From: Iphione sp. A-MEVVRFRX5
Lineage: Eukaryota
Length of the DNA stretch: 64,000 bases
Assembly (NCBI GenBank): GCA_976226885.1
Contig: OZ320315.1
Coordinates: 47,988,001 to 48,052,000 of the forward strand
Direction: 5' to 3'
Under the pieces are notes generated by a model. That model was given only the letters and a program-made list of their open reading frames with translations. It was not told the DNA's origin and did no database searches. Positions 8,801-64,000 of this stretch are shown in pieces (position 1 is the stretch's first letter; every line of letters starts with the position of its first letter). A program made the translations under genes and the position numbers.

Positions 8801-11599
8801 ACATGTATGATGTCAGGAAAAATAAAATTACAAAATAGGATTATGTGTATCCTCACTCGAATAAACATCTAAGACATTTTTGCATAAAATAAATTGCATG
8901 ATTTTAAAGAAATCTTTACATCAAGACTATTTTCCTGCGTAGCTTTCCTCTGGTGAATAACCATTCCTTTGGAGTTCTAATCTCACGGACTAAAACCTCA
9001 AATACGAAAATCGTCTGGGACGGAAAGGACGGATGTTGTGTTAATGCAGTGCGTCAGTGAGGAATGAAACATCACAACCACTCTTTTTGCGGTGCCACTC
9101 AGAGAGATGTAGTTATGTTTTATAAAGAACACCAATCGCCGTTTCCTGTAAGCATTTAATGATTACAGCTAGACAAAGTTGCCGTCATTTAGGTATCATT
9201 CTGTTGGCTGCTGCCGGTGAGAAAGCTAATGGACCCGAATCAAAAATAAGTTTTGTGAGTCTGTTTTCTGTGTAAGACAACATATGTTATCATTCCGTTG
9301 TGTTTTCTTGTTGAATCCTATCCTGTTAAGGTTTTCATTATAGAGGTCCGTTATCATTCTTTAGTATTATTAGTTAATTCTAATTTAGAAATCTATGAAA
9401 GTTTCATGGTACAAATCTGTAACACCGCTCACTTACCAAACGGCTTTTTGGTAGCTAAACAAAATGCTGAAGGCCATATGTATATGTATATCCTTTTTTA
9501 TCATCACTGTAATTAAATCACTGGACAAACATTAGATGTAAGTCTTCATCCTCTTCCTATGAATTGTCACGGGTATTAAAAGTTTCAAAGTTACTGACAG
9601 TATGAATAATCATTTTGTGCCACATGAAAGGATACTATGTACCGGATAACATATTCAATGGAGTTATCCTTGATTCCTCTATTACAACTGTGGAATCATA
9701 TTATCAAAAGGAAAGTTACCTTGAGTTCCGCGGATGATAAATATTCAAACACCAAGCAGCGATGGGAGGCAGGTTCCCCCATCCTTTGTGAAGCTCTCAA
9801 AGGATGTTAAGATTTTTTCACGTTAAGTCGTGTCTCTCATAAAAGCTCACATTTCCGATACGATCACAGGGCCTTAAATAGTTCTCAACGCTATAGTGAT
9901 GTGTTTCTTTAGTGTAGCCGATCTGATGTCACAACTGCAGGTGAAATCAGCGCCTGCGGTAAATACCTTTTATTGTGGATCTGTTCAAGCCGATTACCTG
10001 ATACCAAAAAGCAGTTCGTTACGGGAAAAGAAACACAGAATCATTTACAAGACACGAATAGCTTACGGGAGATAATACATCCGAACAGGAAACCGCGTGT
10101 TCTTATAACACAATGCTACCCCACACCAAATTAGTTTTTATTCTTGAGCTTAAGCCGCCTGCTACACTTCAGACGCAGAATAATAGCAGATCATTGACAT
10201 TAAGTATTGACACTTAAGTGTGTGTATATGTTCACGGGTATGTATGTACTACTCCGACCACTTATTGTGCAGCCCTCTGCATCCGTCAATCAGCTAAGAA
10301 AGTGCCAGGTGGTCCTTTCCCCAGTGACGCTGGCCACTGCTTTTCATTTAGAGGCAATCCTTCCATGCTGAGCACTTATGTGTATGCACATTGTTTGGTC
10401 CTATCCTGTGACACGTGGTCAATTACGCTGTCGATATTTGCGAACAATTTTGTAATCAACCGACACGAAGATGGTTTGCTTTTTCTGCGCTTTCTGCCTA
10501 ATGGCGCGTTCATATACCTGAACTGATAACTGATCTTAGGCTAGAAGACGAGAGATTGCTTTGACGGTAGGCCGAAGGATACATCAAGGTACACGCCAAA
10601 TAAGGCTTTCATCAAGTTAAATCACTATCTAGCGTTTCTAAGGTCTCAGATCCCTTTGCTTCAGGGTTATATTTGGACTCAAACACCGTGCCGTTGATAA
10701 ACCGCTCCTTTGGAGCACGTTGGGAAATTGTTGATGGATACAAGAAGATAAACACTATACCTCGTAAAAGGGTTCTCTCAGATATTTCAAAGGACAGGTA
10801 CACCTGCAATTCGCATTCGAACGATCACTGATACTGGCGCTTCTAGAACGCACCTGAAAACACAAATCATGGGGAAGTATTTATAGCATGTGTCGTACAA
10901 AATCATTTTCTAACTTAAGTATGAGAAACGCTCTTGTTTGCATTACATCTTTCATGCAGTGTATATTGTAATTGCTACTTCCTCATACAAAATGTATAGA
11001 TGTGGTAATGTAAGATAAATGTTGTGTGATAGGTCAAGCACAGGCGTATCTTTCATGTAATACTTGTATTTATATTTCACGTACGCTGTCATTCCAGTGG
11101 AAATGCAGAATGTACAGTATCACTATTTACCAGATTTTGTATTTATGTATATAATGCTATAGAAATAGCCAGTTGTTTGCAGTGAATTGTCCCTTAAGGG
11201 AAATCTGCAAGCGTCTGTTATCTGTTGTGACATATATACAGCCAGACAGATTTGCAAACAGACAAACACATGCACCTGACCATTGTCAATGCTGGGGACG
11301 TGGTGAGGTAAATACAGAATATTGCCCGTAGAATTTTGCTTAAGAAATCGATTTCCACAATTAAATTAAATTGTAGAAACAAGAGAAACGAAGAAAAAGA
11401 GAAACTGGAACAGAAGAATGGAGAAGACATGGTGATGGGTAATGCGGAGTAGGAGAAATGAGAAATAGCAAAGAGAAGGGAAAGAGCTTTTTATGTATTT
11501 CCAATAAAAAGCAGCTTCAAGTATTTTTAAAATGAAATTTGAGTAAGCAATCTCAGGTATGAAGGGTTTTCATGTACATGTATTTCCAATAAAAACAAT

Positions 11600-27700: not shown

Positions 27701-30700
27701 CTTAAACATTGTAACTTCAGAGCTATAGTTCACCCTCTCTCCACGCGTAACCTTTCAATAGTCAAACCTAGCAACTGCAAATTTGTTTAGGTGAATAGTG
27801 GGTTATAATAGGCTAAATATATGCTATAAATAGCAGTATCATATTCCATACTATCTTGCTTTCTTCGGCAGAACGAAGAGGCTTCCTTTGATACATTTAT
27901 TGAAATGCATACTAGTTATATATATATATGTATTCGCACTGGTATACTTATAAATACAATGTCTTGCATTTATCTGGATCCTGTCTGTTCTTGGACACGT
28001 TTTCCTGCAAGATCTGAAACCACACGTTGTGTTACTGTTGAGGATGTACAGTTAGGCAATGGTTGCCTTTCCATTTGCCGCAGCAGGATATTCCGTCTTC
28101 TTGGAGTTAGGGTTGTCTGTGAAATCTAATGTGTGCCTCTGCGCACTTGCTTGCAGGAGAGTGTCAGATGAGGGGGTTGTCAGGTTGAAAGAGAAGTGCT
28201 GTGAGGGAGGGCGATTACTTTCGCGTGACAGCGAAAACACAAGTCAGCATTGAGCTTCGCTTTCCGTGGCTCTGAGGTGACATGGCTGAAAGCTTGTTGA
28301 CAGAAAGTGTCTTCACCAGTTGCACGAGATGATGATTGTACACATGGTTTTCTTTTGCTTCAACACGTACACACACGCTTTACAGCTGCCTCTTACTCAC
28401 GCCTATGCCTGCGTGACAAAGAACGCTGTCTTCAAGTCGCCCTCTCATGGAGTCAGTGGTCCAGCTCGAGCAATAAGATCACACTGTCCATTACGCTGAC
28501 CCCTGTATCACCTTTCGAGCTCTCCTACATGAGATCACAGCTCTCTGCTCCCGACTTGTCATTCTTCTGCGCAGTGTCCTAGACCGCCATCCGGCACTTT
28601 CGTCATTTTGCAGTCCCAGCTTAATGAGTTCCGAGGGGACATCGGCCATATTGAATTACTTGCTCAGGCCGTCCCAGCAGTTCCAACTGGGAAGGAAGGA
28701 ATGCTGCTGTCCGTACAAGGGCTGTCTGGCCTCCGACCACAGCTCAAATTTTCATTCCATTTGTACGACCATTGAGGAAATCAGTGCTGACAAGGTTAAT
28801 CCTCCACAAAAAAGGATACAGAGAGAATATCCTCGCAGCTACATTGTTAGTGCAGATAACGAACATGGTTTTACACTATATGTATATCATGCTATTTCTC
28901 TACCCCAAATGTTTCGAAACGTACGTTTTTCTTAAATAACCCTAAAGTTGCTTTCACTCTCTCGTTTCATTTCGATTTTATTTTTGGTGTTACCTCTCCA
29001 TATTGGTACAGCGTTTTGCATGTAGACAAAAAAGTGCGGTATATAAGGTAGTACATGTATGTAACATGATGTAAAGTTGAGTATATTGCAGACCCTGACA
29101 AGGCCAATAGTGTATCATAAGATTTTCTTATAACATCTGTGAAAGGTAAAATCTAGCAGTCAGATTGTCCACTAGCATTCGTGCTTCTTGACACGGTTAC
29201 TACACATAACAGACAATGGCACGTCGCTACCATATTCTAGGTCATTAAAGATAGGAAGTCACATTTGAGGCTATAGCCTGTGATAGAGGAATTTAGACAT
29301 GGTTCTGAGTGACGAATTTGTATGAAATAACGTATGCCAATGAGACACACATCTAAATGCCCCTTGCTGAACAGGCCTACTTAGTTCGGTTAGTACATGT
29401 ATACTTGTGCCTTTCAGATATAAATGCCACTTGATTCAGCGAGTGCACCTGAGTGCTGGATGATACAAACATATATCACTTGGCAGCACCTGTTAAGGTG
29501 CACTTGCAAGGAGACCTTCTCCTACCTGTTTACACCATCAACAAGTGTAGCTGGGTACGTCAAGTGCAGGAGCAGTAGTGTTTTCACAAGGGTAACTCGT
29601 ATAAACATAGGGAAGTAACTCTTCACCATGGCAACCCTCAGAGGTGTGTGCCTCACTCGGTTTTGACGATCTTGATGGTGTGCTTAAAGCTCGACCTGTC
29701 AACGACTCTGCACCCCACCAGAAGTGAGGACCATTCCGACTTTAGAGTTATTCCTAGTATCCATAGGTCAAGATTGGTCCCTCTTGTCGACCCCAGAGTG
29801 AACTAAGTGACTTTGTCTAGGCTCTATAATAGCCCCTTATTGTCACACCAGTGATGCACATTGGTGGGATATGTCAGGCAGTAGCTTCATAATCGCAGTA
29901 GGTCTAGGGTTGTAACTATTACCGCTAGGTCGTCTGCATATAGTACAGAGTCTGCCCAATCAGCTAGTGATTGGGGCAGAGAGTTAATCAACAAATCGAA
30001 TGTCAGGAGTCCGAAGACCAATCTTTGCCCTCTCCCTGGCATAGATCAAGTTCAGATGATTCTTCCCCATCAGTCCTGATGAAATGCAGCCTATTCAACA
30101 GATAAGTCTAGTACCATCTGCTGCAAGTGGTGCATTATCAGACTCACCAAGTCAAATTCATTTTTCAAATCTAACACAATTAGGCATGGTTACTTGCTGG
30201 CATTGGCATATTCGAGTAGCTTGCTATCGCGTTTTTCATGCTCTGGTTATTTTGTAGGGTCTGTTTGCTAGTGAGGCGATATTCATATGTTCAAGCTTTT
30301 CGTTCACCCTACCGCACCACCAGTGCTCAAATATGTTGTCTGGTAAAGGTAAAGATGAATGTGGGCAATAGTTGCCTAGCTTGATAGGATCTATGCAATG
30401 AAATCAGGGTGTTGAAAGAACACGTTTGACGACGTTTGTAGGAATGTCTACAACATGCGACGACTTCCTCATATCAGTGAATCGTACAATCTCGCACACG
30501 TCAGAAAAAGGATCGGCAGTTCGATTTCAAATCGGACTGACGGGTCCTGGCCAATGTACATGAGTTGACTGGGGTTTTAGTAAGCTTAGTCACGTGACTG
30601 ACAAAGAAAATGTTCACGGCTGTTGGCAGGTTAATATTTTCATCACATCCCATCATATCTGGATCAGTTAAGGTCATTCCCTTTTACCTAGTCCCCGTCA

Positions 30701-48700: not shown

Positions 48701-51700
48701 ATCTTCTTCAGTTCAGTTGAGGTATTTTTTTAACGTTTATTTATCTGGGCAATCCAAATGGTGCCAGCGTACGCTACTACAATCGTGGCAAGTGAGGATC
48801 CTATGTATAAGAAGGTGTCGATTATTTACAGAGAGACTATATACAAAATATACAAGTATATACAACAAAAGTAATGATGAGATGTGGAATTATAGAAGTG
48901 TGCGAAATAAATAATTATACTATAGTGTTCATTTATTGACTTAGCGAACTCGCCAGTTCCCTTATCCAAAAATGTTCTTTTTGCTTGTGCCATCTAGCTT
49001 CTTATGTCATTATATTTTAGGGCAGGGATGTATCCTACATTAGTCTTTGAATAAATATGATCATTCTAGAAATAGGTGTAGATTATACCCCTGCTAATAG
49101 CCATATCCAGACCTATTTATCTCGCTAAACTGATAACCAAAACAAAGAATCTCGTCTGATATGTCCGTTGTGTATGCTTGTAATTTTACATCTGATACTA
49201 TATGGTTAGTATCGCTTTGCATTGGAAAAGGACAAATTTATTTTAAAGCACAGTTCATGTGTTTCTTAATCAGATCAGCAGGTGGCCGCTGCAAGTTACT
49301 GGGCTGGCTGCGGAGGATTGAGGCCCTGTTGTGGTAGTTCCGCGCCCTTAATGCTGAGTGAAGCCTCAGGAAACAGACCGACACGTTGGCTGCAGGACGG
49401 CGACGGGCCGTCCACACTGGAGCCACTGTTGCCCTCGTCGTCTGCCTAGGAGGCAATCAGTAATATGGCAGGCGGAGGCAATGTTAGCCTGATTGGCATC
49501 TGCTGCCCTGCCAAGCCTCCCAAGCACCGTCACAGCCACAAAAAATACTCGCCTTATGACTTTCTTGTCATTTTTATCTCCTCTAAACAGAGTCACATTG
49601 TCATTCGTGCTAGAGGCTTCTGTGAGATGGTGACCGAGATTTAGATGACACGGAATTAGATTCTAGGCGCGACTTTATTGTTCTGAAAATATTTCTCTCT
49701 AGTGAGTCAGCGCAACCTCCTGGTCAGTTTACTATGGCGGCGGGAGATATCTGCAGGATAATTATGCCTAAAAAGGACAATCCTTCACCAATTCAATGTT
49801 GCCTTATAAATAGATTCCAGCACATCATTGATGTGTTTCTCATGAATTTCATGTACCGACTCGCATCTGCATTCCGCGATTACTAATTATATTCCTCTTT
49901 CAGAGAAGCCAGAAAATGCCAATAGAGATACGTTTTCATACCGGACACATTTGATCTTGCCTTCTCTGAAGAATCTATTTGCTTCAATGTTTATTATCAT
50001 TTGACATTTCAGAAAGATTACCCGAAAGCAAAGAAGCTGAATACGTCGGAATTCACCCTTGTAGAGAACGAGCATTTTAACTACATTCCTGTTAATCTGA
50101 GTATGAGCACCGTCCATGTGCCAACTAATGTCTATGATGAATGTAAGTACCGAAATATGCCGTACAGTTGATGTTAAAGGTTACAAATGACGCCCTTAAA
50201 TAGAAAAAGACTCGCATGATGCATTTGGCTAAAATAAGATTGTCAAGAAGAAAAAGTATCGTTTGAACATCTGTGATATCTTTTTCACCCAAACAGATAA
50301 TATCCCGGATATCTGTGTTTTGCACTTATACGTATAGTTCCTTCACTGTGTGCAAATATATTAACAAATTTTTAGATTCGGTTTAAAATGTCGGTTTGAT
50401 ACCAATGCATTCCATTCATAACAGATACGTCTTGTTGGTTGCCAGGGTATTGGGAGATGCTCAGATGTGTTCGTTTATCAGTACTAAATTAAACTCCTTA
50501 TTTGGCACAAACATATGCAAATGTTGCATGTACACATGTATTTACAGCAAGAGGCACATCTCTGGAGACGAGTTTATTGAGATAAATTTAAGTACATACA
50601 TTTTAAAATACAGATGTTATTTGACACACATGTTCAGCCATAGCCAGCTGATTTATCTGCACAAATGTAGCTACTATAACATAGTAGTAGCCAGCAGACC
50701 CAATCCGTGGCACGGCTAGTAGGAGTCACTCCCAGAAGGTTTAGTCGTAAGTCTTCAACCTCCTCCCTAAGTTTGTTACAAGTCACGGCTCGCATCTTCA
50801 TTGGGCCCTTCAACCAGGAATCACAAACACTAACGAGACAGTCCGAGGCCTGAGCCTGACAGTGTAGAGGCAATCAGCCGATTCGGCGCGGTATAAACAT
50901 ACTTCGCACGCCCGCTCCAGTGCTGCCGAGTAGACCTGATATCAAGTCCTCTCTTAACGACCGTCCTTGCATGATCTCACGCCAAACGCCCACAGACGCC
51001 CGCTGGCATTTCACCGTATCCACGCAATACTTTTTCTGCTAATATTACGCCTCCTCTACTCTGTTTCTGTACCCTTGCCCTAGAGTCCGTCCCATTTTTA
51101 TTCCTGTAAACTCCAACTTCTTAGTATTCTCCCTTTCCCTCCCACCACCCCCACCTCACCATAGCTCTCTTTCTTTGCCCCCCCCCCTCCCCTTTTATCG
51201 TCTCTCTGTTCCAAGCTCTGTCTTCCTCCATAATGTGTCCTTCCTCGAAAAGTGTTGAAATATTGGTACAGTTTAATTGATCGCATCGTTTTAAGCTTTA
51301 CTGTTACATTTTACCATCCCATTCATGAACACAACAATGTAGAATGCTTCTTTGCAAGCAGTAACTCAGTGACAGAAATCTTTAAGCGATCACGTGTTAA
51401 TTATCGCTCTCCCCGAAAATGAGGATTCGCTTCCCTGGAAGTGGCTACAGAAAACTTGCGCTAGGCAACCAACACGTAGCAGGAAGTGGAACTCTTCAAT
51501 CTTTCATTTCTTAGATTGTTATCTCGCATGGAAGGAAGCGATTACGTTTAGCGACTAGCAGCCATAGCGCTCAATGCAAATCACTGCCTGGCAATCGGTC
51601 TGCTCCAATGTTTTTCAAAATACGAGGCACGAAAATGAACTAAACGTATGCAATAGTGACCCGGGATTATTTGATTATATTTCAATAATAGTCCAGTTCA

Positions 51701-54700
51701 CTGGACATGTCCACAATATTGTCGAAGGTAGTGGACATGTAATTCCAAATGTACAATGCTATAGTTGGTGAAGATAATAATTTTATCGTATCTATTCCAT
51801 AACAGTGTGGTTTCAACAATATTATTATTCAAAGAGAGGACCCTAACATAACTGCTGCATTGGTAAGCTTTATCACAGTGGTGGATATCTGAAAGCAATT
51901 GAGATTTTTGATATACGCTGGTACCGTTGAAATATGTACATGCACACAAATGCCGCCCAGATCCGTATACCCAAACGAAAGTAATTTATTTCATAAAGAT
52001 AAAAGTCACTAATATTCTTGGTATTGTTTGCTTCACCGAAGAGGACATGTTACATGGTATCCAAGGTAACCATATCTGGCACTGTATGTAGACTAGCAAG
52101 TTAATGCCCATGCAAATTTACACAAATCTCTAGAGTGTACCGTTCTCACCTTTATAGCTGCCGAAGTTATAAACGGAGTGACCTGGTCTGAGGCCCTCGA
52201 TGAACATTTCCGACAGAACTACGACGATGATGAAACACTTACGTGGCAGTATTTTGGCAGCGCTTCGGGCTTTTTCCGAAACTTCCCAGGTAGGCCTTCT
52301 GGTACCAACAATACTATTGTCTGGCCAGTTTTAATTGAACCACAGTAGTTCTATGTAAAATGTGGTGTTCGAATACTTTTTCTGAAATAATTAGATATTT
52401 TTGTTCATTCTTATAAACCTATATATCTAGTTGATTGTAATCATGTGTACTAAACGTTAAGAAAATATCATGTGTCTAAATGTTCGGTTGATGAATGGTT
52501 CCATATATGGAACGATTTCTAATAGCTATTTGAAAACATGCAATTTAAGATAAAGTGAACTCTTTTGTTTTAAACATAGCCGTTATTAATATTTGTTAAG
52601 CTTACAAGAATGGATGATATTTTTTGTTCTAATTACGTTGATAAAAATAAGGGAACGCTAATGTTTCGTGCAGTGCTATAAATGTACAAATCACATGTGG
52701 ATTGACAATCTTGTCAAATATGCAGTTCACACTAAGTTTTGTTCACATATCATGTAATGATTTTTGACCCACAGAAGCAGTGCCAGTAATGGGTCCTCTT
52801 ATTTGACATTATGTCTGTATGATTTAGTTTTTAAAAATCAACTAAATGCTCAGTTTCTTAACGAATTCCACGAAGGAGTGAAATTCCATTCGACGTTATA
52901 CCTCTAGTTAAAAGCTCGAAGCAGTGGTTACGATAACATGATGTGCGAACTCCGATCGTATATATTTCTTTGCTGCTGTTTTGGCTTTGACAATCGTTTA
53001 TTTCTCGGAGTTGTAATATAAATGCTTGAAAATCGTGTGTTTCTTATCAGTGTCTAAATCATTTGCCAGCCACTTTAAAGTGGATTTCAATGTTTACGTA
53101 TTTCTGGTACGCATGTTCGCTTGACGTCTTCGACAATCTAAACGGAGTGGTGATGGTGCCAGCACTCTCTTTTAAGTGTCAGCGATTTGTGTCACGTTTT
53201 CTATGCCTGAGACTTGCTGTCCTTTGTGTTCAGGCATTCAATGGCCAGGTTCTGGGGTAGATATGTATGACTGTAGAACGCGCGGCTGGTAAGTTATGAG
53301 CAACTAGCTCGTTGAATTCGGGTGATAAGTCGCGCGATTTTATTTACTCCATCGAAAGTCTTTTCATGAGATGTCCCCATTAATAGCCAAAGACAAAATT
53401 CCAGTGGCAAAAAAACTGCCAGTTTGAAATTGCGCAACCTTATGACCCGATATCAAAAAGAGCGTTGCATTGAGAATAGATCCATATCTCCTGGCCCACA
53501 CAATCCACGCACAACACAGTCGTTGAAAGGCTTTACAAATGTTTTTCACCTTCGCCCCACGCTTTTTTGCACACTTCACTTTTTCCCCTTCACCCAGGCA
53601 GTTGAGTTTCTCCACAATGCGTCAACATACCATATTAATATGAATGCGTAGAAACAATACCTTTGTCCTGTTTTACCTATAACCTACCCAGATGTTCCAG
53701 GGTGTCTCTCTGCAACAACAATGCCATTAGGGAGGAAAGACATCATTTTGGAAAAAAACGAGACATTTATCATAAATCTCCAGTCACAAGGAAGCAAAGG
53801 CGGCGTAATACTCTTAAGCTCGTATTTAAAAAGGAAGGAATACGATTAAATTGAATTGGGCTCATATTTTGTGGAACACATCTTTCAGAACATACCATCA
53901 GCGTCATTGCAATGTTAATTCCTTATCCGCCCGCCAGGTCTTTGCGACAAGACTCCTGTAATCGAATGGACTGTCTTTTTCCTACAGCATTTGGTCTCGG
54001 TTCGGCATTTATATCGATAGCTTACTGTGGTGTAGCGTTAACTGATGCGGTTACCTGTTGAAATCGAGAGTAATGCGTCTGAAAGCTTAAAACGAAACGG
54101 TAAATGTCACTAGCATAAAAAAATAAATGCTTGCCAGGAATCTAACGGTCACAAATCCCTAGTCCTTGCAGAATTCTGGAAACAAAACCTTTGGGCTAAA
54201 AAGTTGTCCTCGATTTTAAAATCATCGACGACTGTAATGTACGCAACTGAGACACACTCTGGACATCATATTTTAGGTTCTTCCCAGACATGATGTTTTT
54301 CCTCTTTAAGGTGAATGGAGATTCGATTATTACCAACAGATAACGATGACTAATAAACTATTGATGGAAGCCTGACCAATCAAGTGTCGAGCAACAGGGG
54401 TAACATGTGGTAGATATACATGTCCGTTTGTTGTTGTTGTTGCTGCCCCCCCGGGCTGTCCCCCTTTCTTCTTCTCACAACTTTTCTTGTTAACAACATC
54501 CGCTGAGCAGACAGAATTGTTGCCCGCAGAAAGCTGAGATTAATGGGAGACCCCGACGCCTCGGGTCTCATATTATCATATCAAAACCCTTGAATAGTCA
54601 CTTACAAATGACAGGTTTAGTTGTGACTCGGCCCTCTTACGGACGCCGATAACTCGGCCACAAATGACGTATTTCGTAGAAGTACCACGCGGCATCAATC

Positions 54701-57700
54701 CAGCACCCGACTCGCCATCTGGTGAGGAGACGGTGCTTGTGGCGGAATATGTCACCTCTTACAACCGGTCGAAACCGTTTAGTCTAGGACGGCCCTGCCA
54801 TGTGTATAGGCGGAGGTCACCAGGGATTACATCCTCGGATTATCTCTTGGTCACTTCTAATAAAGCTTTTATGACTGGGTATGATCCAGGAACGTGCTAT
54901 GCCTGAGGAGACTTCCTCGTGTTGCTGGCCTCATAATGTTCGTTCTTTCATCGACACAAATATATATTTCGAGGTAGCAGCACATCAAAATACAAGAGAA
55001 ATTTCTTGTATCACTGCCAAGTATTTTCGTAATTTTTCTTTTTGCTTGTTTTTCGTCATATACCTCAGGCCCATAATTTGTTTCCGGTAGTTCTTGAAAC
55101 ATTTTATTTCATTCTTGTTTTGTATATATCTTCAGAACAAATAATAGAGACATATACAATACACCATTTTGTTGCTTACATCATTAGCTTTCATTTGATA
55201 TACATTTCATAATAATATGAGCAGCAGAACCTATGTTACTATATATCTTTGGGGCTTTGAGTCTTAATTAGCATTGAAAAAAGGAAAAAGAAAAATGAAT
55301 CTGCCTACTGGCCGACTCTCTATTTTTTCAGCATGTTACCAGAAACACACTACTTTTTTATGCCTTACGTATTTTATCAAAACAACGACTTTCACTTGGC
55401 CTATTCAAAATATCTGTGTTTTCGATAACCTGACCTACCCTATTTTCTGGGCTATCGCAACATTTTCTATATTATTGTTTTGCAAATATCTTATCCATGA
55501 GTAAGGCTCATACAATACATTTTGTTCCTTACATCATTAGCTTTCATACGATTCAATTTCAATACAATCCAAGCAGTACTGATATAAGTTATGTACTATC
55601 TAGCTTTTTCAATGGAACATTTGTGTAGTGAAAAAAAAATATCAACCTACCTAATGACCTATTTTCAGCAAGTTTACGGAAACACACATTTTTTAGGTTT
55701 TACTAAGTAGTTAAATGTTAACACTCTATTGTATCAGCGCCATTTGGAACCTCTTAACAATTCAATCCGTAAGATTTCAATATCCCATAAAAGGAAATTG
55801 AGAGTAACTTGACTCTTCAAGAGTTCACTTCTCTGTGTGTCAGCAACTTCCCACGAGTCTTGCTATATGTAGCTCTTCTGAAACGAGCTGGAATAAAGAA
55901 TTTCTATTCTGTAGGTAACCTGCCCTTTGGTTTTGTCGCAATATTATCCCATTTCAGACTATAGCGTATTGTCGATGATTCAAAGGGCATGGTTCCTTTT
56001 GTTTATTTGATAATAACACTGGACACAACACCGCCATGGCTTCCATTTCGCCATACCAAAAGGGCATAATCCTACTCCCATGTCACTGTAGCCCCAGTCC
56101 GGATACACAGCTTTTGGAGTCGCATTTATGCATCGGTATCTCTGGTGATCGAATCTCCAGAACTCCACACTGCTCTCTGGTGTTAGGGACCCGAATGTCA
56201 ATGCAACACGCCACCTGGTGGAAGGCCCTAGTGGCATGGCCATCTAACGCCTGTGTTATTCCCTTCCTTTCCCACCCTCCTCTCCTAGGGACAAACTGGC
56301 GAACTGAAAATTATGAGAAACAAAAGATTGACATGTATGACTGTAGAACAAGGGGCTGGTAAGGATATCTTTTCCCATTTTGTTTCGTGCATACATTCCT
56401 ACAATAGGTGATTTCTCGAGCAACGCACTTTTATCCGTACTTTATATATTGCACATTACACAGTGGTAGAGGTTAAGAAGCATGGACTCTTACCCTTTGA
56501 ATAGATACCTTACCTTCGAATAACGCGTTCTATTTATGCCTTGTATTCATTCTCACTAAGACTTTGATTATAACTTGACGGACGCCAACGACAGTGCTAC
56601 CTGTAGATAAAAGTACGCTATTTGATTATAAATGATTCAAAACTAGTTCGCATAAAACAGAACATTTCGCCAAGTTGAAATAGAATGTATACTGTCACAA
56701 GACAATGCTGTTCTTTGCATAATTGTACAAGCCCATCATCACATGCTTCACAGGTACATTCAGGCTGCGACATCTCCAAAGGACATTGTGATACTTATTG
56801 ACGCCAGTGGAAGTATGACAGGTCTCAGGATGGAAATTGCTAAAGCAACAGTTGAGAAGATATTAGATACTTTGAGTGATGACGACTTTTTCAACATAAT
56901 CAAGGTAATCTCCTATTCTGCTTACAAGTACACATTTTACTCTGCATACCGTGTGTAATAAGGTGGAAATGGAAATATTTGTTATTAAGCTATGTTTATG
57001 TAAGCTATATACGCATAGGCTGTCCGCGTAACTTTAAAATACGTGTATTTTCTGTTTTATCCTTAAGAAGACAGTATTCTCTATGGAAATTCAATGTTTG
57101 TTTTCAGTTTTCCAATGTACCAAGCTATGTAGATGACTGTTTCAATGGAACTTTGGTTCAAGCAAATGCCGACAACAAGAAGGTGCGTTTATTTTCTTTG
57201 ACAGCAGTCTTCTCAAAGCTAACTCTGGATGTTTTGGAAATACATCAAAGAAGAGCTGTTCCTTTCACACCAAGACCTTAAATATCTAGGCACAAGATCA
57301 AAAGATTGTCTACCTTAATGCATGACGCTGATGCGTTCGTTTCCTTTGTATGTACACGCTATACAAAACATTATACGTGAGAGGTCTATGAAATGTCCTT
57401 CGAATCTCAGTTATTAACCATTAGTTAACTTTCAGCGTTTGAAAGAAGCCATACGACATATGTCAACGAAGGAAATCGCTCAGTTTGACGATGCACTCAT
57501 TCAAGCCTTTGACCTACTAGGAGAAGTAAGTCTACGAATTCATATCTAATTACCTGAACTGGCATGCCACAATTGGATCTCACGCGATTTTCGGAGCATG
57601 ATCAAATACATAAACTGTTTTATACCTTCAAAATTATAAATCAACTTCGAAGTGAGAACAAATGTATCATGCCATGTACAACTGAGTGAAATAAGGTAAA

Positions 57701-60700
57701 CCCTCCGACATGTCCCTGTTGTAACGTTCGTACTAAAAGTCACATGACACACTATCACATTTTCCTTAGGTTCCGTCCTTCCCAAATCCGATGCAAATCA
57801 GTTTTAATTTGTTCCTTAACAAATATGGCACTCTCATAATGCGTGTGCGGCAAGAACGGAACATTCTCCTTTCCTGATCCCTCTGTCTTTCAATACACAT
57901 TGGCTACTCAATTTGATGCATGCCACTTTGTCATTATAAGCGTCACATTTCCATACATCAACAAGAAATACATATTACAATGTTTAAATCTTTCCATTTT
58001 CCCATTGTATAGAAACTAAATTAAACAAATAGCCTACAACCTTGGTTTCTTATAGCGCTCAATATTTAATACAACGCATCTGTGTATTTGATAATTTTAG
58101 TGTCCAACGTACTCTCCCTATGAAATAATGGTAATAAGTGTTCTTTTCTTAGATGTACAAACCATATTCATACCGTCCTGCATGTTGAAGTGCATGTAAC
58201 ATCTGTAAAATCTAGTCAAAAATAAACTCTGCTTGAGATCTTGTTTTTAATTATTTGGACGCTACGTTCTTTCACTATCCTTCTTGCAATACACTGTTGA
58301 GCGAACGTTAGTCGATTCCATAGGGCAAAGATCATGCAGATGTTTATTTTATTTAGATTTTACAAAAGACTAACACGCATTGAACAACATAAACATTTTC
58401 ATTTCAACTTTTTCGGCCGAGTGACATTTACCATGGAAGCTAGTCTTACAATGCAAGGATCTTTTAAATATGCGTGGCTTATGACTGGTGTTCCCATGGA
58501 AACTTTACACAGCAAATTTAATGCTATCAAATTTACCAGATTTGGGTAATAATTCATAGTAGTAAAAGAGGCTTTGCATGAATGGTTTGCACATTAGCCT
58601 GTCATGCCTCGATTTGTAAATTTGACTACCTGGTCGATGCTTACGTTCCATGGACATACACACCTTGTTGCCATGCACACTTGGTTACTGTAGCAACAAG
58701 CTTGGTGCACTAAGTTTAGGCAATAATCACTCAGTGTACATGCCATGTGATTTGTTGTCAGAACAAATGTGCGCCGTCGCCTTTGCTGGTAAAATATTTG
58801 ACAAATTGTCTGATAAAATGATCAAAAACTAAAAGCAATAACCGTATAGGCAGTACTTTACATTGAATAAGATATATATTCAAATATTTAAGGTCCAGTG
58901 ATGGTACATGTACAGTTAATTAAAATAATACTAAAATGACAAGAGGATGCCATTTAAGTTCCTTAGATATGTTCCCATTATATAGAGGTGTGTACTCTAT
59001 GTATAAGATACGGTGTCTTTTATAGATGAATCGCACTGGCAAAGGAACCTTATGCAATCGTGCCATCATGCTCATCACAGATGGTGCTCCAGAAACCTAT
59101 GAGAATATTTTCCGGCAATATAACTGGCCGGAGAAGAATGTAAGTCAAATGCCTCTTTCAAAATACCCCCGTAAATGTACATCTGCCTGCTGAGTAACGA
59201 TTTAGACGTTTCTGTTCTAGTTAGAATCAGATAATATCGCCTTTTGATGGTGATTAATGTACTATATACCCTTTCCTTAGGTGAGGGTATTCACATACCT
59301 CATAGGACGAGAAGTAGGCGACTCTAAGCAGGTCAAGTGGATGGCGTGCGCCAATAAAGGTGAGTTCAACAAATGCAAGTATTATTGGTTATCTTGAAGC
59401 TATAGCATATATGACCAATGCCGAAACTTATGAAGTAAGCCACTCCAATGGTTAAAATGAACGGTGGAGGTCGGTTTATCATGAGCAGATACGATCGAGA
59501 ATCGAGAAAAACGAAAAAGCAATTTACAGTGTAATCCAAGGATACATGAAAGCTCAATCCATTCCTTTCTGCGTGTTCTCGAAGGAAGTCATTTAGCTCG
59601 GGTATTTACAACGAGAAAGGAATTCTCTCTGTAATCATGTTATTAATGTAGGATTAGTCAGAATAAATTCAAACGGTGGAGGTATATACAATGGTTACTT
59701 TCCTGAGTTAGTGACTGTATTTCATAATGGGAATAAATTACAATGAGTGTCAATTTTTTAACATCAATGATTATTACTTTAATCAAACATATCGTTTGCA
59801 GGATTCTACTCCCCTATCAGCACTCTGGCAGATGTTCAGGAGAAAGTGCAGGTCCGTCCTTTTACTTATTTGTGCTGTTGTTACCTTATATCAAGCAGTA
59901 ATTTTATTTTATTTTATTTTTGCACAAGTTTTAATGTTTATTGCAAAGGTGTCCATTGTATAAATATATCTTACCGGTTATTAAAGACGCATGACTTCGT
60001 CGTGGCGTGTCTTGTGTTCTCAAGTAATATTAATTCTGTTAAATATAATTTCTATGATTTACGAAAGAAAAACTTACTTAGGTTAAGAAATGATTCTGTT
60101 CATATTCTTCTTCTGATGTCTCATGCAAAACATTTTATTGTGTTCATGAATATTTGTTCAATTGTACATCTCTTCGTTGTGTTCACTGCTGTTTTACGCT
60201 AATTTGTTTACGTATGTTTCGAAAAAAAAGGTTCCTCCATTTAGTCCAAGGATATATTCCAAAGGCATTGGAGGTGGAGCTGTCGACTTTGAATATTTAA
60301 CCACATCTAGTATAGTAGAAAAGAAACCCTCTATCATTGCAGCAGATAATCTGTTTAGAATACCCTTATGTACCCTACTAGCCTTGTCCCTCATTAGGAG
60401 CATCAATATGACCGATTAGAATGAAAACATTGTACCAACCGCTGTTGTAAGCAGCAATAGTAAACGTACTGACATACTAGCCAAGTAGTAGCTTCTTCTT
60501 TTAGGAGTTTTACACCGTAAGTAGAGAAGACAGAAGAGTCAAAAGTAACGAAAAAGAAGAAAAAGAGTCTTTCGTTGAATATTGTGTGACCCCTTTCCAG
60601 GAATACATCCATGTTATCAGCCGTCCGATGGTGATTAAACGTAAATACACTAACACGTGGACAAGTGTATATTCTGATGCAGCGGTAGGTCGCCAAATCA

Positions 60701-61407
60701 CATCACCTCATTTCAATGTGTGTGAGAGACCTAGATTTATGCTAAGTATTTTCTTCTTCTTGCATCTGCTGTCGACGTGTCTGTGTCATCGTGAACATCA
60801 AACCTTTATTTGGACGTGTATGTTTGTGTGCTGTGTGCTTCTTTCAATGCTCCCTTCCGTGGAAAAAAAGCAGGTTCAATCGGGATGATGAGACAACTCT
60901 TCAAACGACAGTTCCAGGGAACATCTGCAGCAGTTGACCATTGCCTGGCTCATTGCTTCTGTCCTTCTGTCTAAGGATGTGTAGTTACAGCAATGAACTT
61001 CCACATGTCCACTGTAACACTTTGATGAAGGCCATCATTTGTCCATCTACAATAGCAAAAGAAATTATCAATTAGAGAGAATATATATTACCTTGTGGAA
61101 GATCGTTGCATGTTAGGTTTTATTCACCACAAGTTTCTCCTTTGTAAGTCATAAGCCAGTTCACAGTTTTCTTTCATTACTGGTCTATGACACAAAGGCA
61201 GTTTGTGTTCATATTACTCACTGGTTAGAGTAGGTGTTTATTTTCTTTTCTGATTAGTTATTTCTTCCTAGATCGCTACATTATCTTGTGTGTAACTTTC
61301 AGAACTATGTGAAAACCGTCAGCAGGCCGATGGTTATAGATAAACCGGACAAAACTATATGGACCCAGGTGTACATGTCCGCCGATTCGGCCGAGGATTC
61401 CGACCAG
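24660..61407 (+). CDS. CACNA2D3: Voltage-dependent calcium channel subunit alpha-2/delta (alpha2delta-3/4-like), multi-exon, partial (5' and 3' exons not in window)
   Basis: Manually spliced GT-AG exons join in frame to [37 protein letters not shown]|[20 protein letters not shown]|[44 protein letters not shown]|[44 protein letters not shown]|[alt exon]..[10 protein letters not shown]|[32 protein letters not shown]|..CFNGTLVQA..|..|..[18 protein letters not shown]|[19 protein letters not shown]|[16 protein letters not shown]|[alt exon]..SRPMVI..WT. The motifs [24 protein letters not shown] and WMACANKG match alpha2delta-3/4 as I recall them. 3 vs 4 cannot be resolved, so read the symbol as '-like'. 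Confidence 0.95.
29620..31700 (-). mobile_element. Decayed non-LTR retrotransposon (CR1/L2-like ORF2: APE endonuclease + reverse transcriptase), antisense in the 21-kb intron
   Basis: Minus-strand translation gives, in the expected order: [11 protein letters not shown] (31603-31571, APE), [20 protein letters not shown] plus the helical linker (ORF 30787-31236), [23 protein letters not shown] (30174-30145), LLINSLP..LYADD (29943-29929), [15 protein letters not shown]. Many stops and frameshifts. Clade assignment is approximate. Confidence 0.8.
38630..38714. repeat. Imperfect (AGT)n trinucleotide repeat
   Basis: gtggtagtagtagtagtattagctagtagc...ggtagtagtagc. Confidence 0.9.
41618..41631. repeat. 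Poly-G tract (G14)
   Basis: Read directly. Confidence 0.95.
45870..45929 (+). CDS. CACNA2D3: alpha2delta exon, 60 nt, phase 0-0 ([20 protein letters not shown])
   Basis: tctttccag|AAA...CAG|gtacgt. Matches vertebrate 'RLVEAAEEAHLKHEFDADLQ' in length and pattern. Not in the ORF track. Confidence 0.9.
50013..50142 (+). CDS. CACNA2D3: alpha2delta exon, 130 nt, phase 0-1 (KDYPKAKK...[10 protein letters not shown])
   Basis: catttcag|AAA...GAA T|gtaagt. [21 protein letters not shown] matches the family motif HF-x-x-x-PVN-x-S-x-S-x-V-x-x-PTN-x-Y. Confidence 0.93.
52158..52289 (+). CDS. CACNA2D3: alpha2delta exon, 132 nt, phase 1-1 ([11 protein letters not shown]...[15 protein letters not shown])
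   Basis: tttatag|CT GCC...CCA G|gtaggc. Contains WQYFGS-x-x-GFFR of the dCache_1 domain. Confidence 0.96.
53234..53288 (+). CDS. CACNA2D3: alpha2delta alternative exon A1, 55 nt, phase 1-2 ([19 protein letters not shown])
   Basis: tgtgttcag|GC ATT...GGC TG|gtaagt. In frame with both neighbouring constitutive exons; homologous to 56289-56358. Confidence 0.88.
55154..55700. repeat. Diverged tandem duplication, about 356-bp period
   Basis: atacaatac..ttttgtt(g/c)cttacatcattagctttcat at 55154 and 55510. The downstream blocks tattttcagca and gaaacacac are also repeated. Confidence 0.75.
56289..56358 (+). CDS. CACNA2D3: alpha2delta alternative exon A2, 70 nt, phase 1-2 ([24 protein letters not shown])
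   Basis: Long pyrimidine tract then ctcctag|GG ACA...GGC TG|gtaagg. In frame with both neighbouring constitutive exons. Confidence 0.9.
56754..56904 (+). CDS. CACNA2D3: alpha2delta exon, 151 nt, start of VWA domain with DASGS MIDAS motif
   Basis: cacag|G TAC ATT CAG...ATC AAG|gtaatc. [50 protein letters not shown]. Confidence 0.98.
57108..57182 (+). CDS. CACNA2D3: alpha2delta exon, 75 nt, VWA ([25 protein letters not shown])
   Basis: ttttcag|TTT...AAG|gtgcgt. C-F/L-NGTLVQA family motif. Confidence 0.96.
57436..57525 (+). CDS. CACNA2D3: alpha2delta exon, 90 nt, VWA ([30 protein letters not shown])
   Basis: aactttcag|CGT...GAA|gtaagt. Phase 0-0; AL-x-x-AF-x-x-L motif. Confidence 0.93.
59026..59139 (+). 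CDS. CACNA2D3: alpha2delta exon, 114 nt, VWA ([38 protein letters not shown])
   Basis: cttttatag|ATG...AAT|gtaagt. AIMLITDG and YNWP motifs. Confidence 0.97.
59281..59359 (+). CDS. CACNA2D3: alpha2delta exon, 79 nt ([27 protein letters not shown])
   Basis: ttccttag|GTG...AAA G|gtgagt. Contains WMACANKG, whose Cys corresponds to the one that disulfide-links alpha2 to delta in vertebrates. Confidence 0.97.
59802..59851 (+). CDS. CACNA2D3: alpha2delta exon, 50 nt ([17 protein letters not shown])
   Basis: tttgcag|GA TTC...CAG|gtccgt. ISTLADVQE motif. Confidence 0.95.
60601..60684 (+). CDS. CACNA2D3: alpha2delta alternative exon B1, 84 nt, phase 0-0 ([28 protein letters not shown])
   Basis: ccctttccag|GAA...GCG|gtaggt. 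Matches family 'EYLHVLSRP..WT-x-x-Y-x-D'. Confidence 0.9.
61303..61407 (+). CDS. CACNA2D3: alpha2delta alternative exon B2, 105 nt, phase 0-0 ([35 protein letters not shown])
   Basis: aactttcag|AAC...CAG|gtttgt. Gapless homology to B1 over 28 residues. The donor is weak, so the 3' end is less certain. Confidence 0.82.
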
Positions 61408-64000
61408 GTTTGTTGTTAGCAGCCGCAGCTTCTTGGTGACGAGGAAGTTCATTTCGTGTGTGGTTTCCTTTGACGTTGGCTCACTTGGGTTGTAGTATTA
61501 CCGGTGTATGCCTGGGAAGCTCCTCTAGCATCCGTTGACTGCACCGCCCTCTTTGAGGTCCCTCGCTATTCCCACCTCGAGTCACGTCACTCTCTATGAC
61601 TTAACGTTACTCTTTCAGGCACTGCAAGGTGGTAGTGGGTTTAGAGGTGTTGACTTCTTGGATAGATAGTCAGCGAACCAACCATTTTATTCCCCGTCTT
61701 CTTCCCATTGTCCTCCCAAAAGAACCTCCTCTTTGCAAAGCCCTCGACTCTAACTAGTTCTTAGCATGGCCACGACGGGTCGTTCTGAAGGGGCAATGGG
61801 TTTTTTTCACCATTACCACTTCCTCACGTTATCGCCCCTTACTATTTCATGCTAATACAAGGTTCAGTTGCCTCTTTGGCCTTTCAGGCCCTGATTCCAT
61901 CATTTAGCCCCCCTTTGAGCACTCTAAGCTGGCGCGATACCTACAGATGGGCAAACACCATCGAGCCTGACCCTCGCCAGGCTACGGTAAGATGCAACCA
62001 AATGTAGGGTTCTTTTCGTAATTGCGTAACCATAGCTCCTATGGTTCCCTAGTCCATGCCTGTGTAACTACTGCACTCTGCATAGCTTGTCCCATGCCTC
62101 ACCGTAGGCCTAGGACCGAAACCCCAAATGACATCGATATATCCATAAATGGAAATGAGGTGCATAATATTAATTGACTTTGTTGCTGTCATCTATGGCA
62201 TAAGGTCTTGTCTTTTTCAGAACTATTCACCTGATTGATTACATTAATTTATAGTGGTATATGGTCTCTATATTGAGCTTTTAAAAGCATGTCTTCAAGG
62301 ATAAAAAGGACATACGTTTCACAATATTTGTATGGAATACCGGAAGGAATATTTTCATATTTACTCTCGACTAAAGTTTCTTTGCTACATTTCCTGTTTG
62401 TAACTATCACTTTTGTGACATGCATTTCCCCCCGTTAATACCTATGCCAAACGCAACCTTTAACAACTTCTTTGAAAACAGGATTGCCTATATCCTCCCT
62501 ATGAACAGCTGTCTTGCTTGTAAGTCTATGAAATCCATAGTTGGCTTCATAAAGTTCTGATGACTACAACAATGTGCCTCCTACTCATAGATATGAAGTA
62601 GAAAATTAGCTTTCCTGTCAATTATCGAGTCCCAATCAAAAGCTGAACAAGTCTTAGAAAACCCATACAGTAAGAAGTTGACGTTTCATCGGTAATAGTA
62701 TATTAGATAGTATTCATTATGATGTTTGTAGCTATTAAGTATGGAACCCCTTATCCCCTTTGAGAATCTCGCTTTATTAGGTGGTCGATCTAATAAATTA
62801 GAATTACACCACGTTTAGAACTTAGCTTCCTAGCAAAGCAGCTTATGGTGTCAGGACGTACATGCGTACTGCACTAGCCTCGATGAATTTAAAATGTTTC
62901 TTCATCGGATACACCCTTTAATAAATGTACCTTACACTGAAGAAATATTATTCGGGTATTACTATTTTCCCGTCCAATTCCTGACACATTCCAATCTCAC
63001 CATAGACAGTTCACATTTCATGCTAACGAGATCATTGTATATTGTATTAAGCAATTAGATATAAAAACTTTTGCCAAAGCCATCACAGGTCATTGCTGCC
63101 ACCAAAGGTTACATTTGCAAAAATTTCATGAAGAAAATTTGCTTCCCGTTTTTCCCATCAAACGTCACACACCGCAAATATTAATGTAACATTCCTTTAT
63201 TCTGTACAGTGACAGTGTGATTGCCATTACTGCATGGGCCATGTTCGAAGCATCTTTACATAGAGACGTCTGCCACAAACAAATGCTAATGTTTACTTTG
63301 AAGGTGGCAGTTTTGAAATGTCCAAGCATGGTCAGAGATCTGTAACAGTGAACGTACTCCTGGACAATCTCACCTATGAGTGAAGTTCGTAATGTCACCA
63401 GTTGCCTATCGACTCGTGCAAAACACCGGCAATTGACAAGGATTGAGCATTTTTCCCCTTTTTGCTTGATATCATTCGGAAGTATTCTGTCACCACAATA
63501 TGGAACGAGATGCAACAAAAGGCATCTATGAAAAACTGTGCCAATCGCTTTTACATTCTGTTCGTAAACTTGTTTTCTTCTCAATGTTACTAAGTGTCAT
63601 TTTATTGCAATATGTTGCTCACTATTGAATTGTATTCGGTCAACATTTCTAGAATGTAAGCTTATCCTTGTTGGGTTATTATTACTTGGTGCCAGTATTA
63701 TTTATAGGCAAACGCTTCTTATGGTAATTTAAAGTAGACGTTATAGCTTCACTCCCATAAAACCTTTCCACTATAAACTTACTTTCATCTAGCCAATATA
63801 TTAAAGGCCAGAGTTTTCTGTTGTTGTTTGGTTGGATAGCTTTTAGGGGGATTTTAAATTGGTGATAGCCCGCAATGTTTGCTAACATTATGTTGATACT
63901 TTCTTTGCACTCCGGATGCTGGTGGTGGTGGTGATGATTCTTCGCCCTCCTCGCATTATTACAGCATGACGCTCAGGTAACAACCGACAGACTGATCTCA

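What the first reader, a model, noticed from the sequence alone, without database searches (positions are those of the whole stretch)
60601..61407. Duplicated exon pair B differs at the Y-x-D pocket position and in charge
B1 and B2 align without gaps (12 of 28 residues identical, including SRPMVI and WT-x-VY). B1 keeps WTSVYSD, like vertebrate WTNVYLD and WTEAYID. B2 has WTQVYMS, losing the Asp that, as I recall, contacts the ligand amino group in alpha2delta-1. B1 has a basic KRK stretch; B2 has DKPD and a 7-residue-longer acidic tail (ADSAEDSDQ). Both are multiples of 3, so double inclusion would stay in frame and exclusivity needs active regulation.
Basis: partly seen in the sequence, partly recalled or inferred. 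Interest (0 to 1): 0.82.

Follow-up and report, generated by a model that had tools for sequence, protein, structure and literature searches.

The report
Old alternative pocket exon in worm alpha2delta
A worm calcium-channel helper gene (alpha2delta) has two tandem versions of the small exon that forms one wall of its amino-acid-binding pocket; the second, unannotated version is kept in six annelid genomes and always lacks a near-universal aspartate, so splicing probably makes two pocket variants, but no RNA data could be obtained.

Summary
Exons B1 (60601-60684, 28 aa) and B2 (61303-61407, 35 aa) are tandem duplicates in an alpha2delta-3/4-like gene. Both have AG/GT splice sites, lengths divisible by 3, and align to the same residues of solved alpha2delta-1 (rabbit 412-455).

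The same B1/B2 pair lies between the same flanking exons in five other annelid genomic sequences, including Capitella, Dimorphilus and Ridgeia. It is absent from Owenia and the brachiopod Lingula.

The B2 copies form one clade. Synonymous sites are saturated while replacement sites are conserved, so B2 is a selected coding exon. It is missing from all three annelid gene models checked.

The conserved B1/B2 difference is the Asp two residues after the motif Tyr: Asp in every B1 and in 122 of 123 database alpha2delta proteins, but Ser (Ala in Ridgeia) in B2. B2 is also 1-7 residues longer, in a beta-hairpin turn next to the pocket.

The Asp that salt-bridges the ligand amino group is D493, in a later constitutive exon. 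D454 only lines the pocket. The KRK/acidic-tail contrast is specific to this species.

Mutually exclusive use is inferred, not shown: no sequencing run was listed and no B2 transcript was found.

The parts
52154..52291 (+). Upstream alpha2delta exon for the first pocket strands. Equivalents of rabbit W207, V209, A217 and Y219 read W, Y, F and N here.
   Evidence: phmmer against PDB alpha2delta-1, E 2e-8, chain residues 181-221; tblastn with P0029 and P0052
53234..53288 (+). Exon A1 of the other duplicated pair (context only). It ends in MYDCRTRGW, the carboxylate-binding Y..R.W part of the amino-acid motif.
56289..56358 (+). Exon A2 of the other duplicated pair (context only). It keeps MYDCRTRGW, with a longer loop before it.
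56754..56904 (+). VWA-domain exon with the MIDAS motif DASGSMTG. It shows that the gene is an alpha2delta.
   Evidence: 756 hits in the representative library, the long ones being annotated alpha2delta-3/4-like proteins
59802..59851 (+). Constitutive exon just upstream of the pair ([16 protein letters not shown]). It ends in phase 0.
60601..60684 (+). Exon B1: the canonical version, 28 aa, with the motif Tyr and the near-universal Asp (WTSVYSDAA).
60685..61302 (+). 618-nt intron between B1 and B2. It is long enough to be spliced, and no conserved element was found in it.
61303..61407 (+). Exon B2: the divergent version, 35 aa, keeping the motif Tyr but with Ser in place of the Asp (WTQVYMSAD) and a 7-residue acidic tail.
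61408..64000 (+). Start of the intron after B2. The next exon (GL.LMTSVAQPVF in relatives) lies beyond the window end.

Best explanation
B1 and B2 are an old tandem exon duplication in an annelid alpha2delta-3/4-like calcium-channel auxiliary subunit gene. Both are functional coding exons, most likely used one at a time.

The exon encodes the end of the last VWA helix, a linker, and the short strand that returns to the first dCache_1 module. That strand carries the motif Tyr (rabbit Y452) that contacts the amino group of a bound amino acid.

Choosing B1 gives the canonical pocket wall (Y-x-D-x-A), followed by a 4-residue hairpin turn. Choosing B2 keeps the Tyr, replaces the near-universal Asp with Ser, removes a conserved linker Arg, and lengthens the hairpin turn by 1-7 residues.

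The predicted result is two isoforms of one gene whose ligand pocket differs in polarity and in the loop next to it. They would therefore differ in which small amino acid they bind, how tightly they bind it, or how ligand occupancy affects trafficking.

Shown here: the duplication, its age, purifying selection on both copies, the conserved residue differences, and the position of the exon junction in a hairpin turn of a model.

Inferred: exclusive use, expression of B2, and any change in ligand binding.
For: - The pair is real and far beyond chance. Both copies map to the same residues of solved alpha2delta-1.
- The same order (upstream exon, B1, B2, exon C) occurs in L001, L002, Capitella L005, Dimorphilus L008 and Ridgeia L007. 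Every B2 has AG and GT and a length of 87-105 nt divisible by 3. Every B1 is 84 nt.
- A B2 profile finds exactly two B-like segments between the flanking exons in each of the six annelids, and exactly one in Lingula and Owenia.
- The B2 copies form one clade (bootstrap 89, SH-aLRT 99) on a long stem.
- Synonymous differences are saturated (0.7-1.0). Replacement differences are 0.16-0.42 for B2 (Ridgeia 0.42-0.58) and 0.11-0.26 for B1.
- Outside the exons blastn aligns nothing between the window and L001/L002.
- Asp is at this position in 122 of 123 database alpha2delta proteins and in all B1 copies. B2 has Ser in five species and Ala in one.
- None of 145 proteins with a B-like segment has two of them.
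- The Capitella model (mean pLDDT 72.7) has strand 338-340 (Y-V-D), turn 341-344 and strand 345-355. The B/C exon junction falls at 342|343, inside the turn.
- Chen et al. list Y452, D454, A455 and L456 as lining the pocket, and describe a beta3-beta4 loop that covers it.
Against: - No RNA evidence at all: no sequencing run was listed for this DNA, so junctions could not be read.
- No protein or transcript fragment containing a B2-type exon was found. All three annotated annelid models and two transcript-length Logan proteins use B1.
- Neither reading frame nor intron length enforces exclusivity. No conserved intronic pairing element was found.
- The B2 isoform could not be modelled, so the effect on the pocket is inferred from sequence position alone.
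- Ridgeia B2 is highly diverged (Phe in place of the motif Tyr) and may be decaying.
Confidence: 0.7

Rival explanations
1. B2 is a little-used or decaying duplicate, a pseudo-exon that the spliceosome normally ignores. On this view the gene makes only the B1 protein.
For: Every annotated or assembled protein seen uses B1. No B2 transcript was found. Ridgeia B2 has lost the motif Tyr and shows the highest replacement divergence.
Against: B2 has kept an open frame, a length divisible by 3 and AG/GT sites in six species whose introns no longer align. Replacement differences are 2-5 times lower than the saturated synonymous ones. B2-specific residues are conserved (Ser, Ala, Pro or Gln before V-Y).
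Confidence: 0.12
2. B1 and B2 are independent cassette exons rather than a strict either-or pair. Transcripts with both or with neither would then also be made and tolerated, since all combinations stay in frame.
For: Both lengths are multiples of 3 and the flanking phases are 0. The introns between them are 219-1067 nt, so there is no steric block. In L001 the B1-B2 intron is itself in frame and free of stops.
Against: None of 145 alpha2delta proteins carries two B-like segments. Including both would duplicate a helix end plus the pocket strand. Skipping both would delete the motif Tyr, which is present in 32 of 33 aligned homologues.
Confidence: 0.13
3. B2 makes an isoform whose change has nothing to do with the ligand pocket. 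It might, for example, alter the VWA-to-Cache linker or a partner-binding surface.
For: B2 also loses a conserved linker Arg and changes the His at exon position 4, in the last VWA helix. The linker is modelled with low confidence (residues 321-328). The pocket of this protein is already alpha2delta-3/4-like, with Phe at the A217 position.
Against: The most consistent B1/B2 difference is at a residue listed as pocket-lining, and at the hairpin turn next to it.
Confidence: 0.2

Closest known systems
Alternative splice regions A, B and C of vertebrate alpha2delta-1 (and exon 23 of alpha2delta-2)
   Same: They are splicing changes within the Cache domains of an alpha2delta subunit. One variant (lacking region C) is reported to have lower gabapentin affinity (Page et al. 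2023, PMC9901441).
   Different: [quoted passage not shown] They are not a duplicated exon pair and not the strand carrying the motif Tyr.
Tandem-duplicated mutually exclusive exons of ion-channel genes (for example CaV1.2 exons 8/8a and the CaV2 e37a/e37b pair; from my own knowledge, not tested here)
   Same: Adjacent homologous exons of similar length that replace one structural element with a variant.
   Different: This pair is in an auxiliary extracellular subunit and in a ligand pocket. Both exons are in frame, so exclusivity is not enforced by frame. Exclusive use has not been shown.
Micro-exon or cassette insertions right after this exon in other phyla
   Same: Branchiostoma isoforms differ by 0-12 residues directly after YMDSS. 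Lingula and Dimorphilus have a 4-5 residue micro-exon (HLEK, HFTEK), and Gordionus has a 20-residue insert, all at the same hairpin turn.
   Different: Those leave the Y-x-D strand untouched. B2 changes the strand as well as the turn length.
dCache_1 amino-acid sensor motif (YxxxxRxW ... Y ... D) of bacterial chemoreceptors and alpha2delta-1
   Same: The gene keeps Y..R.W (in both A exons) and the motif Tyr (in both B1 and B2). Relatives keep the final Asp.
   Different: The residue that B2 changes is not part of that motif. It is an extra pocket-lining Asp that is nearly universal in animal alpha2delta proteins.

Membership tests
alpha2delta (CACNA2D) calcium-channel auxiliary subunit | VWA domain with a MIDAS motif (DxSxS) | tested here: met
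   DASGSMTG in exon 56754-56904. The exon hits annotated alpha2delta-3/4-like proteins at 78-82% identity.
alpha2delta (CACNA2D) calcium-channel auxiliary subunit | The VWA domain is inserted into the first dCache_1 domain, with collinear similarity on both sides | tested here: met
   Exons before the VWA domain (52154-52291) and after it (59802-59851 plus B1 or B2) align to PDB alpha2delta-1 residues 181-221 and 412-455. tblastn with full-length homologues is collinear.
alpha2delta (CACNA2D) calcium-channel auxiliary subunit | C-terminal VGCC_alpha2 region and delta peptide | not testable with these tools
   The gene runs off the window at 64000. Orthologues (Capitella, Dimorphilus, Ridgeia) carry PF08473.
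Mutually exclusive tandem exons | Adjacent homologous exons with the same phase, and splice sites on both | tested here: met
Mutually exclusive tandem exons | Both copies are conserved as coding sequence across species | tested here: met
   Six annelid genomes; replacement differences far below synonymous ones; B2 copies form one clade.
Mutually exclusive tandem exons | Mature transcripts hold exactly one of the two | not testable with these tools
   No sequencing run was listed, so read laying could not be used. The only indirect evidence is that none of 145 proteins has two B-like segments.
dCache_1 amino-acid-binding motif | YxxxxRxW (carboxylate contacts) | tested here: met
   MYDCRTRGW in both A1 and A2.
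dCache_1 amino-acid-binding motif | Third Tyr (PctA Y144 / rabbit Y452) | tested here: met
   Tyr is present in both B1 and B2 of the window. It is Phe only in Ridgeia B2.
dCache_1 amino-acid-binding motif | Final Asp (PctA D173 / rabbit D493) | tested here: inconclusive
   The exon is beyond the window end. The Asp is present in L001 and L002 (GVMGTDVP, GVMGTDIP) and invariant in 33 homologues.

The most novel reading that the evidence does not exclude
Annelids have kept, for several hundred million years by the usual dating of the group, a splice-controlled switch that rebuilds the amino-acid pocket of one alpha2delta gene. B1 or B2 would set the polarity of one pocket wall and the length of the covering hairpin. 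Together with the older exon pair A, which varies the loop before the carboxylate-binding motif, this could give four or more pocket variants. On this view ligand sensitivity of calcium-channel trafficking is tuned per cell type by splicing, rather than by gene duplication as in vertebrates.
Probability: 0.3. Interest if true: 0.75.

Novelty: new member of a known kind. Interest (0 to 1): 0.5.

Why it matters
The physiological ligand and purpose of the alpha2delta amino-acid pocket are still unclear, even though it is the gabapentinoid drug site. Here a natural, conserved exon swap keeps the core motif but changes a neighbouring Asp that almost every animal alpha2delta retains, and it resizes the adjacent hairpin. 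This offers a ready-made pair of isoforms for testing what that residue and loop do. It also shows that the Capitella, Dimorphilus and Ridgeia gene models checked here lack a conserved coding exon.

Tried and rejected
- RNA evidence: the look-up of sequencing runs was run on 6 kb (kind any) and on the 807-nt pair (kind rna). Neither listed a run, so read laying could not be used.
- Transcript fragments: a 78-aa spliced query (two upstream exons plus B2) returned only fragments matching the upstream exons. A profile of the six B2 exons returned a single hit, a second genomic contig from the same sample as L002.
- Full-length search: a search around the exon with Lingula P0205 gave 1529 hits. 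The 120 best were read, and all have Y-x-D except Gordionus.
- Exact look-ups of shorter isoforms (P0058, P0100, P0099) found no gene on record, because only the longest product is indexed.
- Mechanism of exclusivity: no 8-mer is shared by 5 or more species in any of the three introns. Inverted repeats flank B2 in the window and in L001, but they are short, imperfect and one among many such pairs, so they were not taken as evidence.
- Modelling the B2 isoform was not attempted.
- The idea that the Asp of S-A-D simply replaces D454 was rejected. It lies four residues after the Tyr rather than two, at the L456 position. It is present in only three of the six B2 exons.
- The weak Ridgeia hit at 28933 was rejected as spurious. 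The real B2 there is at 27749-27841.
Full report
**What is in the window.** The + strand of the last 14 kb carries part of an alpha2delta (CACNA2D-like) gene.
- Exon 56754-56904 encodes the VWA MIDAS motif DASGSMTG. In a search of 1.84 billion representatives it hits 756 proteins. The full-length ones are annotated alpha2delta-3/4-like proteins of Lingula, Branchiostoma, Owenia, Asterias, Tubulanus and Gordionus.
- tblastn with those proteins gives a collinear series of exons: 50052-50141, 52154-52291, 56755-56904, 57090-57218, 57427-57528, 59029-59139, 59282-59361, 59802-59851, then B1 and B2.

**Check of the observation.**
- B1 (60601-60684, 84 nt) and B2 (61303-61407, 105 nt) are each preceded by CAG and followed by GT.
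- They align without gaps at 12 of 28 identities and BLOSUM62 score 64. No shuffle out of 100,000 reaches that, and the next best 28-mer in all six frames of the window scores 26.
- DNA identity by codon position is 15, 18 and 6 of 28. The duplication is therefore old and both copies stayed coding.
- Joined to the upstream exon, which ends in phase 0, each version aligns to the same residues of solved alpha2delta-1 (412-455 in rabbit 7jpk/8fd7 numbering). B1 has Asp opposite D454 and B2 has Ser.
- The next exon is not in the window.

**The pair in other genomes.** Fragments 96% and 93% identical to window exons led to two genomic contigs of other species: L002 (ENA assembly ERZ26695794) and L001 (Logan ERR14986678). 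Both hold the order upstream exon, B1, B2, exon C.

Earlier notes of this scan call the genome an annelid. I therefore fetched the annotated alpha2delta loci of Capitella teleta, Dimorphilus gyrociliatus, Ridgeia piscesae and Owenia fusiformis, plus the brachiopod Lingula anatina.
- Capitella (4759-4851), Dimorphilus (10396-10491) and Ridgeia (27749-27841) each have an unannotated B2-type exon between B1 and exon C. Each has AG and GT and a length divisible by 3.
- Every B1 is 84 nt. B2 is 87-105 nt.
- A profile of the B2 exons finds exactly two B-like segments between the flanking exons in each of the six annelids. It finds exactly one in Owenia and in Lingula, with nothing else above noise.
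- The shared B2 exon independently supports an annelid origin for the window.

**Age and selection.**
- On a tree of 23 exon translations the six B2 exons form one group (bootstrap 89, SH-aLRT 99) on a long stem. This fits one duplication after Owenia branched off. With only 28 columns the tree is otherwise unresolved.
- Synonymous differences between orthologous exons are saturated (0.7-1.0). Replacement differences are 0.16-0.42 for B2 (0.42-0.58 for Ridgeia) and 0.11-0.26 for B1.
- Outside the exons blastn aligns nothing between the window and L001/L002, and no 8-mer is shared by five species in any of the three introns.
- B2 is therefore a selected coding exon, somewhat less constrained than B1.

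**What differs consistently (alignment A1).**
- B1-type exons, including the single exons of Owenia and Lingula, always have Arg at exon position 14, Asp at position 26 (two after the Tyr) and Ala at position 28.
- B2-type exons have Lys, Gln or His at 14. At 26 they have Ser (Ala in Ridgeia). At 27 they have Ala (Asp in Ridgeia). At 28 they have Asp, Ala, Gly or Ser. They are 1-7 residues longer.
- The Asp at 26 is present in 122 of 123 alpha2delta proteins from a database search, and in 30 of 33 aligned full-length homologues.
- The window's KRK, DKPD and acidic tail are not shared by the other species.

**Structural meaning.**
- Chen et al. (bioRxiv 10.1101/2022.12.05.519047) list W207, V209, Y219, W225, Y238, R243, W245, Y452, D454, A455, L456, T463 and D493 as lining the gabapentin/leucine pocket.
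- They state that D493 makes the salt bridge with the ligand amino group. They give the motif as YxxxxRxW plus Y[x27-34]D, that is Y452 and D493.
- Gumerov et al. (PMC8915833) showed that rat D491A abolishes the gabapentin effect, and that the third Tyr and the last Asp contact the amino group.
- Page et al. (PMC9901441) show D454 in the pocket figure but state that it is not part of the motif. A review counts human D452 (rabbit D454) among the residues forming the polar pocket for mirogabalin, and L454 as a hydrophobic contact.
B2 changes a pocket-lining residue, not the salt-bridge residue. The salt-bridge Asp lies in a later exon (GVMGTDVP in L002, GVMGTDIP in L001).
- Both B1 and B2 keep the motif Tyr.
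- A model of the annotated Capitella B1 protein (33-sequence alignment, mean pLDDT 72.7) has the last VWA helix at 306-320, a low-confidence linker at 321-328, and strand 338-340 (Y-V-D). A turn follows at 341-344, then strand 345-355, and strand 367-376 with the final Asp.
- The B/C exon junction (342|343) falls in the hairpin turn, so the extra residues of B2 are inserted there.
- Chen et al. describe a beta3-beta4 loop that covers the pocket and moves in bacterial homologues. That this is the same turn is my inference; the figure is not held.

**Context of the pocket.**
- The exon before the VWA domain exists as pair A (53234-53288 and 56289-56358). Both copies keep MYDCRTRGW.
- At the position of rabbit A217 the window has Phe. 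Page et al. blame this residue for the failure of alpha2delta-3 and -4 to take bulky ligands. The pocket is thus of the alpha2delta-3/4 kind, predicted by those authors to accept only small amino acids.

**How the exons are used.** This could not be tested.
- No sequencing run was listed for this DNA, and no protein or fragment with a B2-type exon was found.
- Exclusive use is inferred for three reasons. The two exons encode the same structural element. None of 145 proteins with such a segment has two. Skipping both would delete a Tyr that is present in 32 of 33 aligned homologues.
- Frame does not enforce exclusivity, and the 219-1067 nt introns rule out steric exclusion. No conserved pairing element was found. 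If exclusivity holds, its mechanism is unknown.

**Comparison with the known.** Alpha2delta-1 has splice regions A, B and C elsewhere in the Cache domains. The papers returned by three full-text searches did not describe a duplicated or mutually exclusive exon in an alpha2delta gene. The site just after this exon is variable in other phyla: Branchiostoma inserts, the Lingula and Dimorphilus micro-exon, and a Gordionus insert.

**Verdict.** This is a new example of a known kind, tandem alternative exons. It is well supported as a conserved coding feature, and its use and effect are untested.

Noticed in passing
window 53234-53288 and 56289-56358; L002 7316-7369, 7684-7734, 8834-8911; L003 51141-51194, 53826-53870; L005 1789-1842, 2054-2110; L008 4462-4512, 5262-5330: The other duplicated exon (pair A, ending in ..DCR.RGW) has two copies in Lingula, Capitella and Dimorphilus and three in L002 and L009. 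Only one was found in Owenia and in Ridgeia. Pair A therefore seems older than pair B, since it is shared with a brachiopod.
   Followed up: partly
L008 10736-10750; L003 64863-64874; L002 12729-12746: A 12-18 nt micro-exon (HFTEK, HLEK, candidate HLVEGK) with AG/GT lies between B2 (or the single B exon) and exon C. It is included in the annotated Dimorphilus protein and in Lingula isoform X6. None was found by this pattern in the window up to 64000, in L001 or in Capitella.
   Followed up: partly
Branchiostoma proteins P0099, P0195-P0201: Predicted amphioxus isoforms differ by inserts of 0, 3, 4 or 12 residues directly after YMDSS, at the same hairpin turn where B2 is longer.
   Followed up: no
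window 52154-52291: At the position of rabbit alpha2delta-1 A217 this protein has Phe, as alpha2delta-3 and -4 do. Y219 is Asn and V209 is Tyr. Gabapentinoid-type bulky ligands are therefore not expected to fit.
   Followed up: partly
L001 1679-1897: In L001 the B1-B2 intron is 219 nt, in frame and free of stop codons. A read-through would stay open. This may be chance (about 3% for 73 codons).
   Followed up: no
L006 32090-32218: In Owenia the upstream exon and the single B exon are fused into one exon, with no intron between them.
   Followed up: no
L007 27749-27841: Ridgeia B2 keeps its splice sites and frame. However, it has Phe for the motif Tyr, Ala-Asp for Ser-Ala, and the highest replacement divergence. 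It may be relaxed or decaying.
   Followed up: partly
L009 (ENA ERZ26695794, second contig): A second contig from the same sample as L002 carries the same B2 exon and the three A copies, with slightly different intron sequence. It is probably the other haplotype or a close relative.
   Followed up: no
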